NCBI GenBank assembly: GCA_964247055.1
Contig: OZ176052.1
Span: forward strand, 4,526,001 to 4,590,000
Length of the DNA: 64,000 nt
DNA from: Paragordius varius
Lineage: Eukaryota > Animalia > Nematomorpha
Reading direction: 5' to 3'
Numbering within the stretch: position 1 is the first letter of the stretch; each line of letters opens with the position of its first letter. A program made the translations under genes and the position numbers. The notes beneath the pieces were generated by a model. That model saw only the letters and a list, made by a program, of their open reading frames with translations. It was not told where the DNA came from and made no database searches. Of the stretch, positions 3,311-9,324 are shown piece after piece.

Positions 3311-3436
3311 AAATGGTTTTTATACTATTTTTAACAATCAAAAATACGTTACTGCATTACAGATTGGCGAACAATTATGTGAATGAACCAGAAATGCGGG
3401 TATTGTATATAACTAAATTATTTTAATGATTAATTT

Positions 3437-3586
3437 GGGCCACTCCAGGAAATAGTGCAAGACCTGGTCGACCCTTTGGAGAAGGTTAGGCAAGCCCAGA
3501 GCATTCTCCAAACACTCCAAAAATGAATTTAATATCATGGACCTCGTTAGAGGTCGTATCAGATATTAAGCTGATAAGAACAGATA
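3437..3586 (-). ncRNA. U2: U2 snRNA gene, 3' portion (nt ~38-187)
   Basis: Minus strand reads TATCTGTTCTTATCAGCTTAATATCTGATACG...ATTCATTTTTGG (Sm site)...GGTCGACCAGGTCTTGCACTATTTCCTGGAGTGGCCC, matching the U2 stem IIa/IIb, Sm site and 3' stem-loops. Confidence 0.95.
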
Positions 3587-3746
3587 TAATTTATTAATAT
3601 ATATAAAAATACAATTTAGAATATATGAAGAAAAGTGCTGCGCAACAATATTGGGCATGGGGAAGTTACAAGGGGGAAGAAAGAAAATATTATATATATA
3701 AAAAAATAAAATAAATATAAAAAGAAATATATATATATATAAAATA

Positions 3747-6700
3747 TTACAATGATGCATTTGTTGGGTTGTTGTCTATGAGGGAATTTCGACCGCTCAT
3801 AAACATGTGGTACATATCCGAGGATGCTTTGATAGTATTGGTAACTATTGATTTTTTTAGTTGGGTAGGGCATCGGAACCTGATCTTCTCAAAAAGAACA
3901 TCGTTTTTCGAATACCATGAGCCGAGGCTCCCTACAACAACTGGAATGACTTGGGTGTTGCTGTATGTTTCCTGTAATTGTTGAGCCATACAGCTATATT
4001 TCATTATTTTATTGTTAAAGGCCGTTTCGAACGATTCTAGCCTGTTTTCAAACGGCACTGTGGGATCAATGATATAGCAATCAGTGCCATTTGTTACAAT
4101 GAGGTCAGGACGTAGTCTCGACGAATCAATGGCTTGATTTTCACTTAGGATCTTGAAATTCGATGGGAGGTTGTCTTTAATCAGGTCCACTATGATGTTG
4201 TGTCTTTTGGTGATTATATTATCATCTTTGAGGCAGTGGTTTAAAACGTGTGCCTGAGTTTCTTTTGACTTGCCGCAGCGACGGCACATTTGTTCCGACG
4301 ACCTGAGTCGCATTTTTGTTGGAAGCAGATTGAGCCGCGCTCGATGGATGAAGTTCCAGTCTCTGAATCGAAGATCTTTATTATTGTAAAGAAAATGATG
4401 ACTGACCTTATCATCAGCGACGCACTCCATCACCCGACCCTGCAAAGCAAAATGGTGTAGCTCAGTATCCTTTAACTTTCGTTTATAAAATCGAAGGTTA
4501 GAAACAACAGCTGAGCGATTGTCTTGGGAGATTTTAGAGAATTCTGAAATTACTGTAGGCTGAAAAGAATCATCAAAAGACCAGGAAATTTTGAGAGATT
4601 CAGACGCAATTCTCGCTATTGTCCAAATGTTTTGGCATTTATTAGCTGGATTTGAGACAAGAGGGTTCTCATAACCAGACAAATACTTGCCTAATTGATC
4701 GGGAGTAATTGAATCTAATCGAACCTTAAAACGAAAGCTAGCCGAAACCTTAAGTTCCTCGAGAGCAGAAACTCTTATAGAAGGATCTAAGCTAGTAAGT
4801 AACTTAAAAGCAGAATCCACACGAAATATATTAATGTCATCTCGGAATAGGGGCATCCCTAAAGCGCCCTTATTACGAGAGCCAAAAATATAATTGTTAG
4901 TGGCATCTCTTGGAAGATTTAATATTTGTTTGAACACTTTAGTTAGCTTTTTATCTAGATATTCACCTGTAACCATCTTAAGCTCATTATTTCTCAACTG
5001 GTGAGAAATAGTGGGATAGAAAAAAGTTTTAATAGCGTCTAGCTTTTGCCAAGGGAGGAGGCTAGAACTATGAATTTTATCCACAATTTCCGTAGAAGGA
5101 ACGGGATTAATGAAATTGAGACCTACAGGCTTTCCAAGAAACTTAACAAACTCGCCTTGACCGATTGAGGGAACGACAACTTCACCAATCTTAAAAACAG
5201 GACTACAAGAAGCAATAGAAATACTATTGCACTTCTCAGCTTTGATCGAAAGACCAATATCATGAATAAGACATTCTAACAAATTGAGCCCAACTTGATG
5301 ACGTTCAGGAGAGTCAGACAATAAAACAATGTCATCAGCATAAGCGAGGACATTGTGACCATTAAACACCATAGATCTCAACACAGAATCGATTGACAAA
5401 TTAAAAAGAAGGCCAGAAATTGGACACCCCTGTTTAATGCCAGACAAGAAAGGAATGGGTTGCGTTAACCCAGAGGCGGAAAAGAACTGAGTACATGAAT
5501 TTGTGTAAATATCCTTAATTAAAGCTTGAATATTATTATCTATACCAAAATTAGGGAGACACTCAAAAATCAGCTGGTGAGGGACCGAGTCAAACGCAGC
5601 AGTGATATCAATAAAGGTTACAAAAATATCTTTTTTATTATGTTTAGCATCAGAAATTGATTTATTTAAAATATAATTATGCTCAAAGCAGCCATCAAAA
5701 GGCATAAATCCTTTCTGGGCTGATGATAATAAGTTATTCTTTAAAATATGTTTAGAAATACGGTTGGCAATAAGGCCAGTAAATAATTTATAAATAGTAT
5801 TGCTTAGCGAAAGGGGCCTCCAGCTTGAAACAAGAGAAGGGTCTCCCTTTTTTTTAGAAATTAAGATTGACTTAGTTACTTTCCAATGATTAGGAATCAT
5901 TCTATGACTTAAACACAAATTAAAAATTTTAGATAAAAGAATACCTTTGGGATCCACCTGCTTCCATTTGGTATATAAAATACCATCAGGACCAGGGGAG
6001 CTGTTAGAAACTTTTCTTAGTTTATCAGAAACTTCAGATGCTGAAAAGGGAATAAAATCAAGTAAAGGGACAGAATTATTAGAATAATTAAAATTAATAG
6101 GCTCAGATTTTTTGCCAATTGTATTGTTAAAATAATTTGTTATATCTTCGTTATTTATTTTACAAGAGGATGGAGGGCCATCAACGATTAATCTTATAGC
6201 CTTTTTCCTATTTCTCTTATACATGCTACGAATATTTAAATCTTTATGAACCAAACTTTTAGACTTATTATAATCAGCCCGGGGAGGAGATAGTGCATTT
6301 TGAATAGAGCTTATTAAAGAACAAACGTCCTCCCAGTCGGAATTCTCGTCGTGGGAGTCAAGAAGGTTATTAAAATTAGTGAAAGGAAAAGTATTTTTAT
6401 TTAAAGCAGATGATTTATTAAAACTTTTATTTGGTGGAGGTAGAGTAACCGATGAAGTGGGTTCCTCATCAACACTCTCCTCAAGAATAGTAAAACGATT
6501 AGATAAAGAGACTTCATTCTTAGAAAAGTAATTAAAATAATTTTTGTTTACCGAACTACTAGGATTTAGAATATTGGAATTAATATCCGTACTGGAATTA
6601 TTGCCTTCATGTCCCTTACCAATGATGTTTGAGGTCCCACTCACTTTGGTAGGAGAAGAATTAACTGGAGAGCTGGGTGGATCAAAAAAGTTTACTGAAT

Positions 6701-7544
6701 GGGTTGGAGATGACTCGACAACCTTAGGCTTATTAGACGGATTGAAACGGAGGTTTGACAAACTTAACGGTTTGCTGTGAGGATGAGGAGGTAGATTATG
6801 AGACCTTTTATGAGATAAGAGAGACATGCGCTTGGGAAACGACAAGTCACACTCATCACATGCGTGAGGCATTTGGACAATAGGAGATTTGGACGCAAAA
6901 ATGCACTCTTTCATATGTATACTTGGGTGAATAGATAAAACTTTGTTACAAGGTTTGCAAATATTAACTATTTTGATTAGTTCTTTATGGACCAGCTTAA
7001 TATGACGTAGAAGAGACTGTCTCTGGGCAGTCCAGGATTTACAACGAAATTGATGATTGCAGGATTCAAACGGACACGAAAAATGATTAGGTAAAGGAAA
7101 ATAGAAGGATAGGGTTTTGTCCTGCAGGGTAGGTTGATGTGGCATCACCTCCAATAGGTCGCCATCATTATCATCATCATCATTATTATTTATCTTAAGC
7201 ATTTTGTTGGCTGGATGGACAAGATCAAGGATGGTCTTGCGTTTAATGTTTGAGCTGGGAGATTTGGCCTGATTGGATGACTGATTGGTAGCTGTGTACA
7301 CGTTGTCGTAGAACTGAGATGAAGAGAGTGAAGGGAATTGGTGTTCATAGAGAGAGCCAATATCGGGTGTTGGAGTTGTCGACGGGTTGACACAGAATGA
7401 TGGATGGCTTTGAGTATTGACCGTGGTGACAGAGGTATGGCAGAAGGTTGTCTTGCAGTACACTGGTTGATTATCATTATCACTTATTGTAAGGGGAAAC
7501 ATGATTTGTACGTTGTTGGAGCTAATAGTGTTGGTTGAAATCAT
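3747..7544 (-). CDS. Retrotransposon polyprotein: 3 N-terminal zinc fingers, reverse transcriptase, CCHC knuckle, PD-(D/E)xK restriction-like endonuclease
   Basis: Uninterrupted ORF (first ATG at 7544; the track starts at a TTG at 7565). Motifs: CPFESC..H..H, CKPC..H..C, CDEC..H..H; SPGPDG, WRPLSL, QKGF, DITAAFD, GIKQGCPIS, LAYADD, KFLG; CRRCGKSKETQAHVLNHC, RHN, RPDLIV...IIDPTVPFE, KIMKY. Confidence 0.97.
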   Translation of the reverse strand: MISTNTISSNNVQIMFPLTISDNDNQPVYCKTTFCHTSVTTVNTQSHPSFCVNPSTTPTPDIGSLYEHQFPSLSSSQFYDNVYTATNQSSNQAKSPSSNIKRKTILDLVHPANKMLKINNNDDDDNDGDLLEVMPHQPTLQDKTLSFYFPLPNHFSCPFESCNHQFRCKSWTAQRQSLLRHIKLVHKELIKIVNICKPCNKVLSIHPSIHMKECIFASKSPIVQMPHACDECDLSFPKRMSLLSHKRSHNLPPHPHSKPLSLSNLRFNPSNKPKVVESSPTHSVNFFDPPSSPVNSSPTKVSGTSNIIGKGHEGNNSSTDINSNILNPSSSVNKNYFNYFSKNEVSLSNRFTILEESVDEEPTSSVTLPPPNKSFNKSSALNKNTFPFTNFNNLLDSHDENSDWEDVCSLISSIQNALSPPRADYNKSKSLVHKDLNIRSMYKRNRKKAIRLIVDGPPSSCKINNEDITNYFNNTIGKKSEPINFNYSNNSVPLLDFIPFSASEVSDKLRKVSNSSPGPDGILYTKWKQVDPKGILLSKIFNLCLSHRMIPNHWKVTKSILISKKKGDPSLVSSWRPLSLSNTIYKLFTGLIANRISKHILKNNLLSSAQKGFMPFDGCFEHNYILNKSISDAKHNKKDIFVTFIDITAAFDSVPHQLIFECLPNFGIDNNIQALIKDIYTNSCTQFFSASGLTQPIPFLSGIKQGCPISGLLFNLSIDSVLRSMVFNGHNVLAYADDIVLLSDSPERHQVGLNLLECLIHDIGLSIKAEKCNSISIASCSPVFKIGEVVVPSIGQGEFVKFLGKPVGLNFINPVPSTEIVDKIHSSSLLPWQKLDAIKTFFYPTISHQLRNNELKMVTGEYLDKKLTKVFKQILNLPRDATNNYIFGSRNKGALGMPLFRDDINIFRVDSAFKLLTSLDPSIRVSALEELKVSASFRFKVRLDSITPDQLGKYLSGYENPLVSNPANKCQNIWTIARIASESLKISWSFDDSFQPTVISEFSKISQDNRSAVVSNLRFYKRKLKDTELHHFALQGRVMECVADDKVSHHFLYNNKDLRFRDWNFIHRARLNLLPTKMRLRSSEQMCRRCGKSKETQAHVLNHCLKDDNIITKRHNIIVDLIKDNLPSNFKILSENQAIDSSRLRPDLIVTNGTDCYIIDPTVPFENRLESFETAFNNKIMKYSCMAQQLQETYSNTQVIPVVVGSLGSWYSKNDVLFEKIRFRCPTQLKKSIVTNTIKASSDMYHMFMSGRNSLIDNNPTNASL

Positions 7545-7730
7545 ATCTATAATAAAAATAAACAATGTATAATATTGGAAAGAAATTTAGATGGACCAAA
7601 GGATTAAAGAATGGAAATAAATAAAGTCCTAATCACCCGGATAATTAATATATAACCAAAAGGGGGCCGGGAATTCAGAGACACACAATTAAGAGTAAAA
7701 ACAACATGCGAATAAAAGATAAAGAGAGAG

Positions 7731-7990
7731 GCGCGAATTTCAAATAACAATTAACAAAGATGGAGAAAGTAAACAAAAACCGTTCAAAAAAATGGCCAAA
7801 GCGCGAATTTAAAGCAAAAGGGAGGGAATATTTTAAAAAAAGGGGGGAAAATAAACAAAAAGCCGTTAGAAAAAAGTTAGGAAAAGCGCGAAATTTTAAA
7901 AAAGGGGATAAACAAAAAACAATTAAGAGGCGCGCGAAATTTGAAAAAGAGGGGGGTAAACAAAAAACAATTAAGAGGCGCGCGAACTTT
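7731..7990 (-). repeat. Degenerate ~48-85 bp tandem repeats in the retrotransposon 5' UTR, each with a GCGCGAA core
   Basis: TAAACAAAAAACAATTAAGAGGCGCGCGAA at 7909 and 7957 (48-bp period); GCGCGAA cores at 7731, 7801, 7886, 7932 and 7980. Confidence 0.85.
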
Positions 7991-8146
7991 ACCAAGGGGG
8001 GGAGATTTAAAAAGGCACAAAACTTACAAAAAAGGCATGAAAGTGCAATGAATTAAAAGGGATAGTTAAATTTCTGTAAAAGTATAAAAGATGGCATAAG
8101 ATCAAGTTTAATTAATTTTATTAAGAATTTAAGGTAAGAAGGGACG

Positions 8147-8181
8147 ACACTTTGATCTTAGCCAAGAGGCCGAGAAGCGAT
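8147..8181 (-). ncRNA. U2: U2 snRNA gene, 5' portion (nt 1-35)
   Basis: Minus strand ATCGCTTCTCGGCCTCTTGGCTAAGATCAAAGTGT is the conserved U2 5' end. Confidence 0.96.
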
Positions 8182-9324
8182 AAATTTCAAAAAATATTGC
8201 TCCAATAATATAAACTTTTTTTATCAATTTATTTAGGTCGTGGATGATCGTATATCTATACAGAAATTGCCATCTATACTTATATAATAATGTCTCCAAA
8301 TCTTTTATTATTCTTTTTAGTTGTTTATTTAATATATTTTTGACATAAATTTATTACCTTATAATTAATTAAGTTTTATTTATTTATATGTACTCTTATT
8401 TTATTAATTCAGATGTTACATAATGAATGCTATTGTTATGTTTTACAATTAATTTTTTTTTGAACCATCAAGGAAATACAGAAATAAAATTAAATCAGAT
8501 TGGTGAATATGGGTTGAGAAATTTATATAAATAAATATATTTATATCTAAAATTAATTGAATAAATTTATCTTGTTATTTTGGATAATTATTATTTAAAA
8601 AACAGAATATATTTAACACTGTAAATGCATGCATATCAAAAACAATAAGCTTTTCTTCCCACGTTTTTTTATTTGCAAACAAAGTCGGTATGTAAACGCC
8701 TTTTTTAAATTCATATCAGTATGTTGCCCAAATTAGCAATAATCATCCTCAAAAAAATTTAAAGTATCTTGTGGATGGACGGGAAAAATATTAGTATTTT
8801 GATGTAGCGGTTTGTTAATATATATGCTGCAATTAATTATAAAGCAAATAAGAAATCAATCCAAAAATTATAATTGTTTTTTAAACGACAAATTTTAAAA
8901 TAATTTGAGAAAAAATGTTTTTAAATTGAAAGAGAAGAGCCAAAAAAATGGTGCGATAGCTAAAAGCTTATGATATGCACAATGTCACTAATAATTTTTA
9001 ATTTAATATAATTTTTGCAAACATTATTTAAATTAAAAACAAACAATATTCTCTAAATTTTGTGAAATGTCTCTTATAATGTTTTTTAATCACAACGCTA
9101 TTTTAAAGTATGATTTCGTTTCTTTATCAAAGTTGTGCTATAATTAAACGTCTGATAAATTTAACTTGGATGATACTTGAGATCTAAAACTAATTTTACG
9201 TTAATAATATTCCTGAGGTACCCTAATAAAATAAAATAATATATAAGTTTTGGCATTGTTTACAGCAAATTTTCCAAAAATTATTTATTTAATTGTTTGT
9301 AAGCATGGTAAATAAATCTTGGGG

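What the first reader, a model, noticed from the sequence alone, without database searches (positions are those of the whole stretch)
8092..8164. Element 5' end encodes an antisense arm to the upstream U2 fragment
Seen: plus-strand TGGCATAAGATCAAGT (8092-8107) is an inverted copy of U2 nt ~18-33 (TGGCTAAGATCAAAGT, 8149-8164), with 15 paired positions and two 1-nt bulges, ~40 nt inside the element. In a read-through RNA it would pair with the U2 segment that forms U2/U6 helix I (established role of that segment). Inference: it could (a) mask the U2 leader so the chimeric RNA does not interfere with splicing, (b) define 5' processing, or (c) act as an RNA guide pairing with target DNA during 5' joining. 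I do not know of a description of this, but cannot check the literature here.
Basis: partly seen in the sequence, partly recalled or inferred. Interest (0 to 1): 0.8.

Follow-up and report, generated by a model that had tools for sequence, protein, structure and literature searches.

The report
Inverted U2 scar forms 5' hairpin
A jumping gene that lives inside U2 splicing-RNA genes carries, at its very start, a backwards copy of part of U2; the best-kept 16 letters can fold back on the U2 piece in front of it. This looks like an inherited integration scar that may have been kept as a protective 5' hairpin.

Summary
Plus-strand 8092-8107 is an inverted copy of U2 nt 18-33 (8149-8164): 15 matches and two 1-nt bulges, 40-55 nt inside a complete minus-strand Utopia retrotransposon that splits a U2 gene. 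It is not a one-off. Contigs of two public runs show the same arm, loop and junction in about 6-9 copies.

New here: the 39 nt between arm and junction continue in register as a decayed inverted U2 (20/39 identical, empirical p about 0.001). The element's first 55 nt are therefore an inverted U2 nt ~18-71, of which only the leader-complementary part stayed intact (15/16; p 0.004).

Aphid Utopias also carry an inverted U2, spanning nt 12-55, starting 13 nt inside the element. Termite Utopias show none, and the springtail and spider matches are not significant.

No ribozyme was detected.

Best reading: a heritable snap-back-type 5' junction scar, a class known from R2 experiments. Its pairing part forms a leader-arm stem-loop in the U2 co-transcript and may serve as a structured 5' module. 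That function is inferred, not shown.

Verdict: a new variant of a known kind, of moderate interest.

The parts
8147..8181 (-). U2 snRNA gene 5' part (the leader). It is 35 nt, U2 nt 1 to G33-U34 in human numbering, with one extra A.
   Evidence: Sequence. Rfam U2 partial match at 8086-8181(-), 40.7 bits, E 1.2e-06.
8149..8164 (-). Leader side of the helix (U2 nt 18-33).
8108..8146 (-). Element nt 1-39. This is the hairpin loop and is collinear with a decayed inverted U2 nt 33-71.
   Evidence: 20/39 identical in the single natural register. Only 0.13% of genomic 39-mers reach that level. Of the 17 registers compared, register 0 scores highest, 16/31 against at most 13.
8092..8107 (-). Antisense arm, element nt 40-55. 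It is an inverted copy of U2 nt 18-33, with 15 of 16 positions kept.
   Evidence: No listed variant in the contigs of runs X1 and X2.
7751..8001 (-). Tandem repeats of roughly 46-48 nt in the 5' UTR, which vary between copies.
   Evidence: the repeat finder families D1-D4, self-BLAST, and the variants and a 226-nt skip seen.
3747..7565 (-). Single ORF of 1272 codons (first ATG at 7544). It encodes N-terminal C2H2 zinc fingers, a reverse transcriptase, a CCHC knuckle and a restriction-like endonuclease.
   Evidence: RVT_1 at residues 571-811, E 6.9e-38. Invariant C1094/C1097/H1106/C1111 and R1152-P1153-D1154, D1167, K1186 in alignment A1.
3585..3746 (-). AT-rich 3' UTR of the element.
3430..3584 (-). 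U2 snRNA gene 3' part, starting at U2 nt 39 (TCTGTTC...).
   Evidence: Rfam U2, 117 bits. Sequence. It matches the Utopia site given in PMC4640811.

Best explanation
The element is a full-length Utopia-type, U2-targeting, restriction-like-endonuclease non-LTR retrotransposon. Its first 55 nt are an inverted copy of U2 nt ~18-71.

Origin (inferred). At an ancestral integration, the cDNA 3' end was extended on a nearby U2 DNA strand before the 5' junction formed. This is the 'snap-back' class of 5' junction seen with R2 protein. Utopia is presumably transcribed from the U2 promoter of the gene it sits in, so the scar became part of the RNA template and is now inherited by the family.

Present state (shown by sequence). 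The part of the scar with no partner in the transcript leader has decayed to about 51% identity. The 16 nt complementary to the retained U2 leader (nt 18-33) stayed at 15/16.

Function (inferred). In the co-transcript the leader and arm form a 15-bp stem with a 41-nt loop at the RNA 5' end. I think this acts as a simple structured 5' module. It would hold the U2-derived leader in a helix and stabilise the template 5' end. The U2 homology would still be there to become the cDNA 3' end, which anneals to the upstream half of a new U2 target and gives uniform 5' junctions. That would be a ribozyme-free counterpart of the R2 P1/P1' pairing.
For: - The arm is real and beyond chance at p about 0.01-0.02, and the predicted fold pairs it with the leader.
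- It is family-wide. In run X1 the flank depth is about 70 and the arm bin about 630, so roughly 9 copies. The major variant contig (depth 389, covering 7969-8153) shows all its listed differences from the window (6 substitutions and 2 insertions; its tally counts one more substitution than the table lists) in 7969-8088 and none in 8089-8153. I counted these as 9 events; Fisher p 0.03.
- The listed variants inside the hairpin are two loop indels, at 8114 and 8127.
- Run X2, a differently coded organism, covers 7993-8176 with 0-3 differences per contig.
- Note s1-257649 reports an antisense U2 copy in the 5' UTR of a copy on another piece of this genome.
- The loop is collinear with inverted U2: 20/39 identical, empirical p 0.0013. 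Arm versus loop preservation differs at p 0.004.
- The same geometry occurs in a lineage only 37% identical in protein. R. padi (L007) has U2 nt 1-58, then 13 nt, then the reverse complement of U2 nt 39-55 with three A>G changes that all keep G.U pairs, then the reverse complement of nt 12-19. M. dirhodum (L008) has the reverse complement of nt 39-55 and of nt 12-33, the latter match at p 0.0025.
- Experimental precedent. R2-mediated insertions produce 'snap-back' 5' junctions with reverse-complemented nearby target DNA. An engineered stem-loop of upstream target RNA plus its complement (SL-28) gives precise 'anneal' junctions and works slightly better than the unstructured leader (PMC11331408).
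- R2 ribozymes pair an element-encoded P1' with upstream 28S RNA, and a retained leader gives uniform junctions (PMC3774820; PMC13580325).
Against: - There is no RNA evidence that transcripts start at U2 +1 or that the helix forms.
- U2 cannot vary, so no true covariation is available. All 15 pairs in this family are Watson-Crick, as expected for a young DNA-level copy.
- The whole first 60 nt, loop included, is invariant between the two main variants, so that conservation is not specific to the arms.
- One single-copy variant lacks 8001-8127, which includes the arm.
- Termite Utopias show no arm (p 0.5-0.75). Both Orchesella families (L002 p 0.06, L004 p 0.45) and the spider locus (L009, p 0.13) are not significant. 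M. dirhodum has 3 mismatches in its proximal arm.
- Four 5'-truncated copies join straight to U2 with no inverted piece.
- The energy-only test over the whole UTR is not significant.
- The genome is said to hold a second U2 class (s1-373610). If the scar was copied from that class, the apparent 'decay' of the loop is overestimated.
- In the R2 experiments the simple stem-loop was clearly inferior to a ribozyme fold.
Confidence: 0.45

Rival explanations
1. A neutral scar. The inverted U2 piece is a snap-back or foldback accident at one ancestral 5' junction. It is inherited only because it lies inside the transcribed unit. The hairpin has no role, and the better preservation of the arm reflects chance, youth, or copying from a variant U2.
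For: - All pairs are Watson-Crick and there are two bulges.
- The loop and arm are equally invariant among copies.
- One copy without the arm region exists.
- Arms are absent or not significant in the termite, springtail and spider Utopias.
- Both direct and inverted U2 pieces occur in 5' UTRs: a direct nt 15-34 duplicate in L004 (p 0.0025) and a direct nt 6-20 piece in L007 (p 0.015). This fits junction by-products in general.
- Earlier notes describe foldback rearrangements next to Utopia insertions in this genome (s1-365699, s1-373804), and L034 shows one.
Against: - Arm 15/16 against loop 20/39 preservation, p 0.004.
- The three changes in the R. padi arm all keep pairing as G.U.
- An inverted U2 is present in two distant lineages.
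- Structured 5' modules with target homology help R2 templates.
Confidence: 0.35
2. Ribozyme P1. The arm is the P1' strand of an HDV-like (or other) self-cleaving ribozyme that cuts the co-transcript within U2, as in many R2 elements.
For: R2 ribozymes build P1 from upstream target RNA plus an element-encoded strand 23 to over 700 nt away, and such elements have uniform 5' junctions. The 5' junction here is uniform in the contigs that cross it.
Against: - No ribozyme family is among the matches at E<=10 in 7500-8260 on either strand.
- The helix is a continuous 15-bp hairpin, which leaves no room for the P2/P3/L3 strands between P1 and P1'.
- The loop and downstream flank are almost pure A/U, with no candidate P1.1 or catalytic-C context (my reading).
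- The U2 transcription start already gives a 35-nt leader.
Confidence: 0.05
3. Trans-acting anti-U2 arm. The 16-nt arm pairs not with its own leader but with free U2 snRNA or with the top strand of the target U2 gene. It would guide or tether the RNP or the cDNA during 5' joining.
For: - Complementarity to U2 nt 18-33 is equally good in trans.
- The cDNA copy of the arm would be complementary to the upstream bottom strand of the target and could bridge the break (inference).
- Weak inverted matches that include the target site itself occur in Adelges and Trichonephila UTRs (p 0.23 and 0.13).
Against: - The intramolecular partner is 41 nt away and would outcompete trans pairing.
- Different lineages carry different U2 segments or none.
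- No experimental precedent was found in the papers read.
Confidence: 0.08
4. Chance similarity in AT-rich sequence.
For: The energy-based duplex test over the full UTR is not significant (107/300). Pattern searches of this size have about 0.7 expected hits per window at 3 mismatches.
Against: - Alignment p 0.01-0.02 within the first 120-250 nt.
- Collinear extension at p about 0.001.
- The same geometry in aphids.
Confidence: 0.03

Closest known systems
Utopia (U2 snRNA gene-targeting RLE non-LTR retrotransposons; Kojima & Jurka 2015, PMC4640811)
   Same: Single ORF with N-terminal zinc fingers, reverse transcriptase, CCHC knuckle and PD-(D/E)xK endonuclease. Sense-orientation insertion in U2, with the 3' flank starting at nt 39. 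No target-site duplication, as reported for arthropod families.
   Different: The host is new (earlier notes suggest a horsehair worm; I did not test this). The protein is only 37-40% identical to the nearest database relatives. Searches of that paper for 'inverted', 'hairpin' and 'complementary' found nothing.
R2 5' HDV-like ribozyme with P1 built from upstream 28S rRNA (Eickbush et al. 2013, PMC3774820)
   Same: An element-encoded strand pairs with co-transcribed upstream target RNA. The retained target leader becomes the cDNA 3' end that anneals to the target and gives uniform 5' junctions. Target-derived pieces extend the element's 5' end over time.
   Different: Here the structure is a plain 15-bp hairpin, not a 7-bp P1 inside a double pseudoknot. 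No ribozyme was detected. The complementary strand derives from an inverted copy of the target rather than from drift of P1'.
'Snap-back' 5' junctions and the engineered SL-28 5' module in R2 protein-mediated transgene insertion (PMC11331408)
   Same: Snap-back junctions fuse reverse-complemented nearby target DNA at the 5' junction. SL-28 is a stem-loop of upstream target RNA plus its complement at the template 5' end, and it yields precise annealed junctions.
   Different: Those are rare one-off products or designed constructs in human cells. Here the product is inherited by a natural family in about 6-9 copies, and a comparable one is found in aphids.
LINE-1 5' inversions by twin priming (from my own knowledge; not checked in a paper here)
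   Same: Inverted sequence at the 5' end of a non-LTR insertion, produced during second-strand steps.
   Different: Twin priming inverts the element's own 5' part. Here the inverted piece is target (U2) sequence and it spans the insertion site.

Membership tests
Utopia (U2-targeting RLE non-LTR retrotransposon) | Reverse transcriptase domain in a single long ORF | tested here: met
   RVT_1 at residues 571-811, E 6.9e-38. The ORF has 1272 codons and no stops.
Utopia (U2-targeting RLE non-LTR retrotransposon) | C-terminal CCHC zinc knuckle plus PD-(D/E)xK restriction-like endonuclease | tested here: met
   Invariant C1094, C1097, H1106, C1111 and R1152-P1153-D1154, D1167, K1186 in a 17-sequence alignment.
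Utopia (U2-targeting RLE non-LTR retrotransposon) | N-terminal zinc fingers and no Myb domain (the criterion used in PMC13188248) | tested here: inconclusive
   The Cys/His pattern at C203/C206 and C236/C239/H252 is conserved. No Myb hit in Pfam at E<=0.01. No structure-level check was made.
Utopia (U2-targeting RLE non-LTR retrotransposon) | Sense insertion in a U2 gene with the downstream U2 starting at nt 39 | tested here: met
   The 3' flank TCTGTTCTTATCAG starts at 3584. The paper states nt 39. The 5' flank is U2 nt 1-34.
Utopia (U2-targeting RLE non-LTR retrotransposon) | Placement inside the Utopia clade in an RT phylogeny | not tested
   No tree was built. Indirect evidence: six of the fetched best-hit loci are flanked by U2 (L002, L004, L006, L007, L008, L010).
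HDV-like 5' ribozyme of R2-type elements | Element-encoded strand complementary to upstream target RNA (P1/P1') | tested here: met
   15 paired positions between 8092-8107 and 8149-8164.
HDV-like 5' ribozyme of R2-type elements | Nested double pseudoknot (P1, P1.1, P2, P3/L3, P4) with a catalytic C | tested here: not met
   No ribozyme family among the matches at E<=10 in 7500-8260 on either strand. The continuous 15-bp helix with an A/U loop leaves no P2/P3 strands.
HDV-like 5' ribozyme of R2-type elements | Self-cleavage of the co-transcript | not testable with these tools
   This needs in vitro transcription.
Snap-back 5' junction (class defined for R2 protein insertions, PMC11331408) | Reverse-complemented nearby target sequence fused at the element's 5' junction | tested here: met
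   8092-8146 is collinear with inverted U2 nt 18-71: arm 15/16, remainder 20/39, empirical p 0.0013. Definition taken.
Snap-back 5' junction (class defined for R2 protein insertions, PMC11331408) | Produced de novo at an individual insertion event | tested here: not met
   The same arm, loop and junction occur in about 6-9 copies and in a second coded organism. It is therefore inherited, not remade each time. Four independent 5'-truncated copies in other genomes show none.

The most novel reading that the evidence does not exclude
Several Utopia lineages (horsehair-worm family, aphids, possibly springtails) have turned inverted pieces of their U2 target into a functional, ribozyme-free 5' module. 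This would be a leader-arm stem-loop selected at the RNA level. It would protect the template 5' end and present the U2 homology for cDNA annealing, or it would pair in trans with U2 snRNA or the target DNA. If so, sister families retargeted to U1 genes in this same genome should have swapped it for an anti-U1 arm.
Probability: 0.25. Interest if true: 0.7.

Novelty: new variant of a known kind. Interest (0 to 1): 0.5.

Why it matters
How site-specific non-LTR elements complete their 5' junction is the least understood step of their mobility. It currently limits R2-based gene-insertion tools. R2 solves the 5' end problem with a ribozyme that holds a short piece of target RNA.

A natural Utopia family, and independently an aphid one, carry an inverted target fragment that pairs with the co-transcribed target leader. 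This shows two things:
- Snap-back junction products seen at low frequency in cell experiments can become heritable parts of an element.
- A simple target-leader stem-loop may be a viable natural alternative to the ribozyme.

The same genome is reported to hold sister families retargeted to U1 genes. That gives a rare natural test of whether the arm follows the target.

Tried and rejected
- **Ribozyme reading.** An Rfam scan of 7500-8260 at E<=10 gave only the U2 leader and three chance-level hits. Rejected.
- **Energy-only duplex test.** Leader against the whole UTR: too permissive. The window is not significant (107/300), so I moved to alignment-based tests. An earlier version of this script timed out.
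- **Second copy in the window.** None found. The gapless inverted-repeat finder missed the arm because of its two indels.
- **Local alignment of the loop against downstream U2.** Not significant (score 6, p 0.9). Only the ungapped natural-register test shows the signal.
- **Extension of the inverted U2 beyond nt 18.** Comparing 8075-8091 with U2 nt 1-17 by eye gave 1/17 identical, so there is no extension on that side.
- **Close relatives in the protein database.** The best hit is 40% identical, so no sequence-level comparison of this family's own 5' UTR across species was possible.
- **Runs X6 and X7.** They do not cover the region beyond 7938 and 7740.
- **Uninformative loci.** L001, L005, L010 and L011 have no usable 5' junction. 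P0111 is not on record.
- **L003.** TGATCTTAGC at the junction is ambiguous: an inverted U2 nt 20-29 (p 0.03) or a direct U2 nt 88-106 with a gap (p 0.18).
- **Findings look-ups.** The search by sequence was blank.

Full report
**What is at the locus**

The window (28% GC) carries a complete non-LTR retrotransposon on the minus strand, inside a U2 snRNA gene.
- Rfam finds the U2 body at 3430-3619(-) with 117 bits. It finds the U2 5' end at 8086-8181(-) with 40.7 bits.
- Read on the minus strand, U2 nt 1 is at 8181. The U2 leader runs to 8147 (35 nt, through G33-U34, with one extra A in the CAAAGU stretch). The element starts at 8146.
- The 5' UTR of about 600 nt contains tandem repeats.
- One ORF, 7565..3747, has 1272 codons. 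It encodes a reverse transcriptase (RVT_1, E 6.9e-38). The conserved CCHC and R-P-D...D...K residues of a restriction-like endonuclease are present.
- The element ends at 3585, and U2 resumes at 3584 with TCTGTTCTTATCAG. This is nt 39, the position Kojima & Jurka give for Utopia (PMC4640811).
- The nearest proteins are only 37-40% identical. Six of the fetched relatives are themselves flanked by U2.

**The observation**

Plus-strand 8092-8107 (TGGCATAAGATCAAGT) and the reverse complement of 8149-8164 (TGGCTAAGATCAAAGT) match at 15 positions, with one extra base on each side. They lie 41 nt apart.
- RNAfold of 8060-8183(-) pairs them: -15.67 kcal/mol, z -1.98.
- Against dinucleotide shuffles of the first 120 or 250 nt of the element, the antisense alignment score has p about 0.017 and 0.010. 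A DNA-level score gives p about 0.02.
- A looser duplex-energy scan of the whole UTR is not significant.

Taken alone, the match is only modestly beyond chance.

**It is a family feature, not a one-off**

The element's 31-mers occur in ten public runs from seven studies, under coded organisms A-G. I laid contigs of four runs on 7400-8300.
- In X1 the unique flank has depth about 70, the arm bin 8082-8112 about 630, and the U2 bin about 5550. That suggests roughly nine element 5' ends and about eighty U2 genes.
- The dominant variant contig (depth 389) spans 7969-8153. All its listed differences from the window copy (six substitutions and two insertions; its tally counts one more substitution than the table lists) lie in 7969-8088. 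None lies in 8089-8153, which holds the arm, the loop and the junction. I counted these as nine events; Fisher p 0.03.
- The listed variants inside the hairpin are two loop indels, at 8114 and 8127.
- Contigs of X2 cover 7993-8176 with 0-3 differences each.
- One single-copy variant skips 8001-8127 and so lacks the arm.
- Another contig stops matching at 8105.

**The arm is the preserved end of a longer inverted U2**

I continued the comparison from the arm, in the one natural register, along the plus strand. Positions 8108-8146 match U2 nt 33-71 at 20 of 39 positions.
- Only 0.13% of all 39-mers of the window do as well.
- With 41 nt the result is 21/41, with shuffle p 0.0005 and genomic frequency 0.07-0.09%.
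- Among 17 registers, register 0 scores highest: 16/31 against at most 13.
- Beyond nt 18 there is no similarity.

The element's first 55 nt are thus an inverted U2 nt ~18-71, apparently continuous across the insertion site, so it was copied from an uninterrupted U2. The part complementary to the retained leader is 15/16 identical, and the rest is 51% identical (Fisher p 0.004). One caveat: the genome is said to hold a second U2 class (s1-373610). If the scar came from that class, the apparent decay is overestimated.

**Other Utopia lineages**

- *Rhopalosiphum padi* (L007). U2 nt 1-58 is followed by 13 nt, then the reverse complement of U2 nt 39-55. In that arm all three changes are A>G, so every position can still pair (three G.U). 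Then comes the reverse complement of nt 12-19, and then a direct U2 nt 6-20-like piece.
- *Metopolophium dirhodum* (L008). It has the homologous arm with three mismatches, plus the reverse complement of nt 12-33, the latter match at p 0.0025. R. padi has deleted the middle of this fragment.
- The geometry is the same as in the window: the sense strand reads U2 leader, short spacer, then U2 backwards from about nt 55-71 down to about nt 12-18.
- Weaker or ambiguous cases:
  - Adelges: p 0.23.
  - Trichonephila: p 0.13.
  - L003: a 10-mer at the junction, p 0.03, with an alternative direct reading.
  - Two *Orchesella* families: a conserved GAG[A/G]AGCGATCA island complementary to U2 nt 1-10, about 30-45 nt before the ATG. 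In the scored local-alignment test, L002 gives p 0.06, while the best inverted match in L004 lies elsewhere at p 0.45.
- Two termite-metagenome families with clear leaders have nothing (p 0.5-0.75).
- Four independently 5'-truncated copies join straight to U2.
- Direct U2 duplications also occur: L004 nt 15-34, p 0.0025.

Target-derived pieces in either orientation are therefore common in Utopia 5' ends. The inverted arm is recurrent but not universal.

**What it is not**

No ribozyme family matches 7500-8260 at E<=10. A continuous 15-bp helix with an A/U loop cannot be the 7-bp P1 of an HDV-like double pseudoknot. The R2 ribozyme analogy therefore holds for the principle (an element strand pairing with co-transcribed upstream target RNA; PMC3774820) but not for membership.

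**Mechanism**

*Origin (inferred).* In R2 protein-mediated insertions, a low-frequency class of 5' junctions called 'snap-back' fuses reverse-complemented nearby target DNA at the junction. [quoted passage not shown] The polarity needed here is a cDNA extended with sense U2 from about nt 18 upward and then joined to the upstream target end. That polarity fits this class, and it is the same in the aphids. Earlier notes of foldback rearrangements at Utopia sites in this genome (s1-365699, s1-373804) and the foldback in L034 point the same way. I did not test those notes.

*Inheritance (shown).* The scar lies within the unit that is copied.

*Function (inferred).* The same paper shows that structure at the template 5' end, together with target homology, matters. 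A designed stem-loop of upstream target RNA plus its complement (SL-28) gave predominantly precise annealed junctions. It did slightly better than the unstructured leader, though it was clearly worse than a ribozyme fold. R2 leaders of about 28 nt become the cDNA 3' end that anneals upstream. The leader-arm hairpin here is the natural equivalent of that stem-loop, and the 5' junction is uniform in the contigs that cross it.

I put 0.45 on this reading and 0.35 on the purely neutral scar. Small weights go to a ribozyme, a trans-acting guide, and chance.

**Comparison and novelty**

The element is a member of a known family. The inverted-target 5' segment and its hairpin do not turn up in searches of the Utopia paper or in the passages I read of two recent R2 papers that mention Utopia. 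Its likely origin (snap-back) and its likely use (a structured 5' module with target homology) both have R2 precedents. I therefore rate it a new variant of a known kind, with interest 0.5.

**Limits**

- The contig tables hide some variants (59 substitution rows and 38 indel rows were not shown).
- The other copies of the family in the assembly could not be read directly.

Noticed in passing
window 39880-39985 (+): Complete U6 snRNA gene (Rfam RF00026, 114.4 bits), about 32 kb from the split U2 gene.
   Followed up: no
window 7751-8001: The element's 5' UTR holds tandem repeats of roughly 46-48 nt with a GCGCG(A)AATTT core. These differ between copies, and one copy skips 226 nt here. The R. 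padi, termite and Orchesella Utopia 5' UTRs also carry tandem repeats or long conserved hairpins.
   Followed up: partly
window 3700-8140, runs X1-X10: Near-identical 31-mers of this element occur in runs labelled as seven different coded organisms, with word shares from 0.78 down to 0.06. These could be related species, or host samples that contain the parasite. This was not resolved.
   Followed up: no
L002:2955-2975 and L004:2445-2470: Two Orchesella dallaii Utopia families share a 12-nt island, GAG[A/G]AGCGATCA, complementary to U2 nt 1-10. The one difference is G.U-compatible. The island lies about 30-45 nt upstream of the ATG amid diverged flanks. Both families also share a long GC-rich hairpin of about 90 nt with compensatory changes just upstream.
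   Followed up: partly
L004:2206-2232: A direct duplication of U2 nt 15-34 sits 8 nt inside the element's 5' end (p 0.0025). It resembles the tandem target duplications described at R2 5' junctions.
   Followed up: partly
L034:5828-5919: In a termite-associated metagenome contig, a Utopia 3' end is followed by U2 nt 51-67, five bases, and then inverted U2 nt 46 down to 8. This is a foldback of the target next to an insertion.
   Followed up: no
L006:1840-1880, L008:1683-1702, L009:8098-8117, L040:3945-3965: Tandem Utopia copies in Adelges, Metopolophium, Trichonephila and a termite metagenome are separated by only about 20 nt of U2 (nt 39-58). This fits a 20-bp target duplication carried as the leader.
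   Followed up: partly
window 8001-8127 (run X1 contig joint): One single-copy variant of the family lacks 8001-8127 (including the arm) and also 7728-7953. Whether its ORF is intact is unknown.
   Followed up: no
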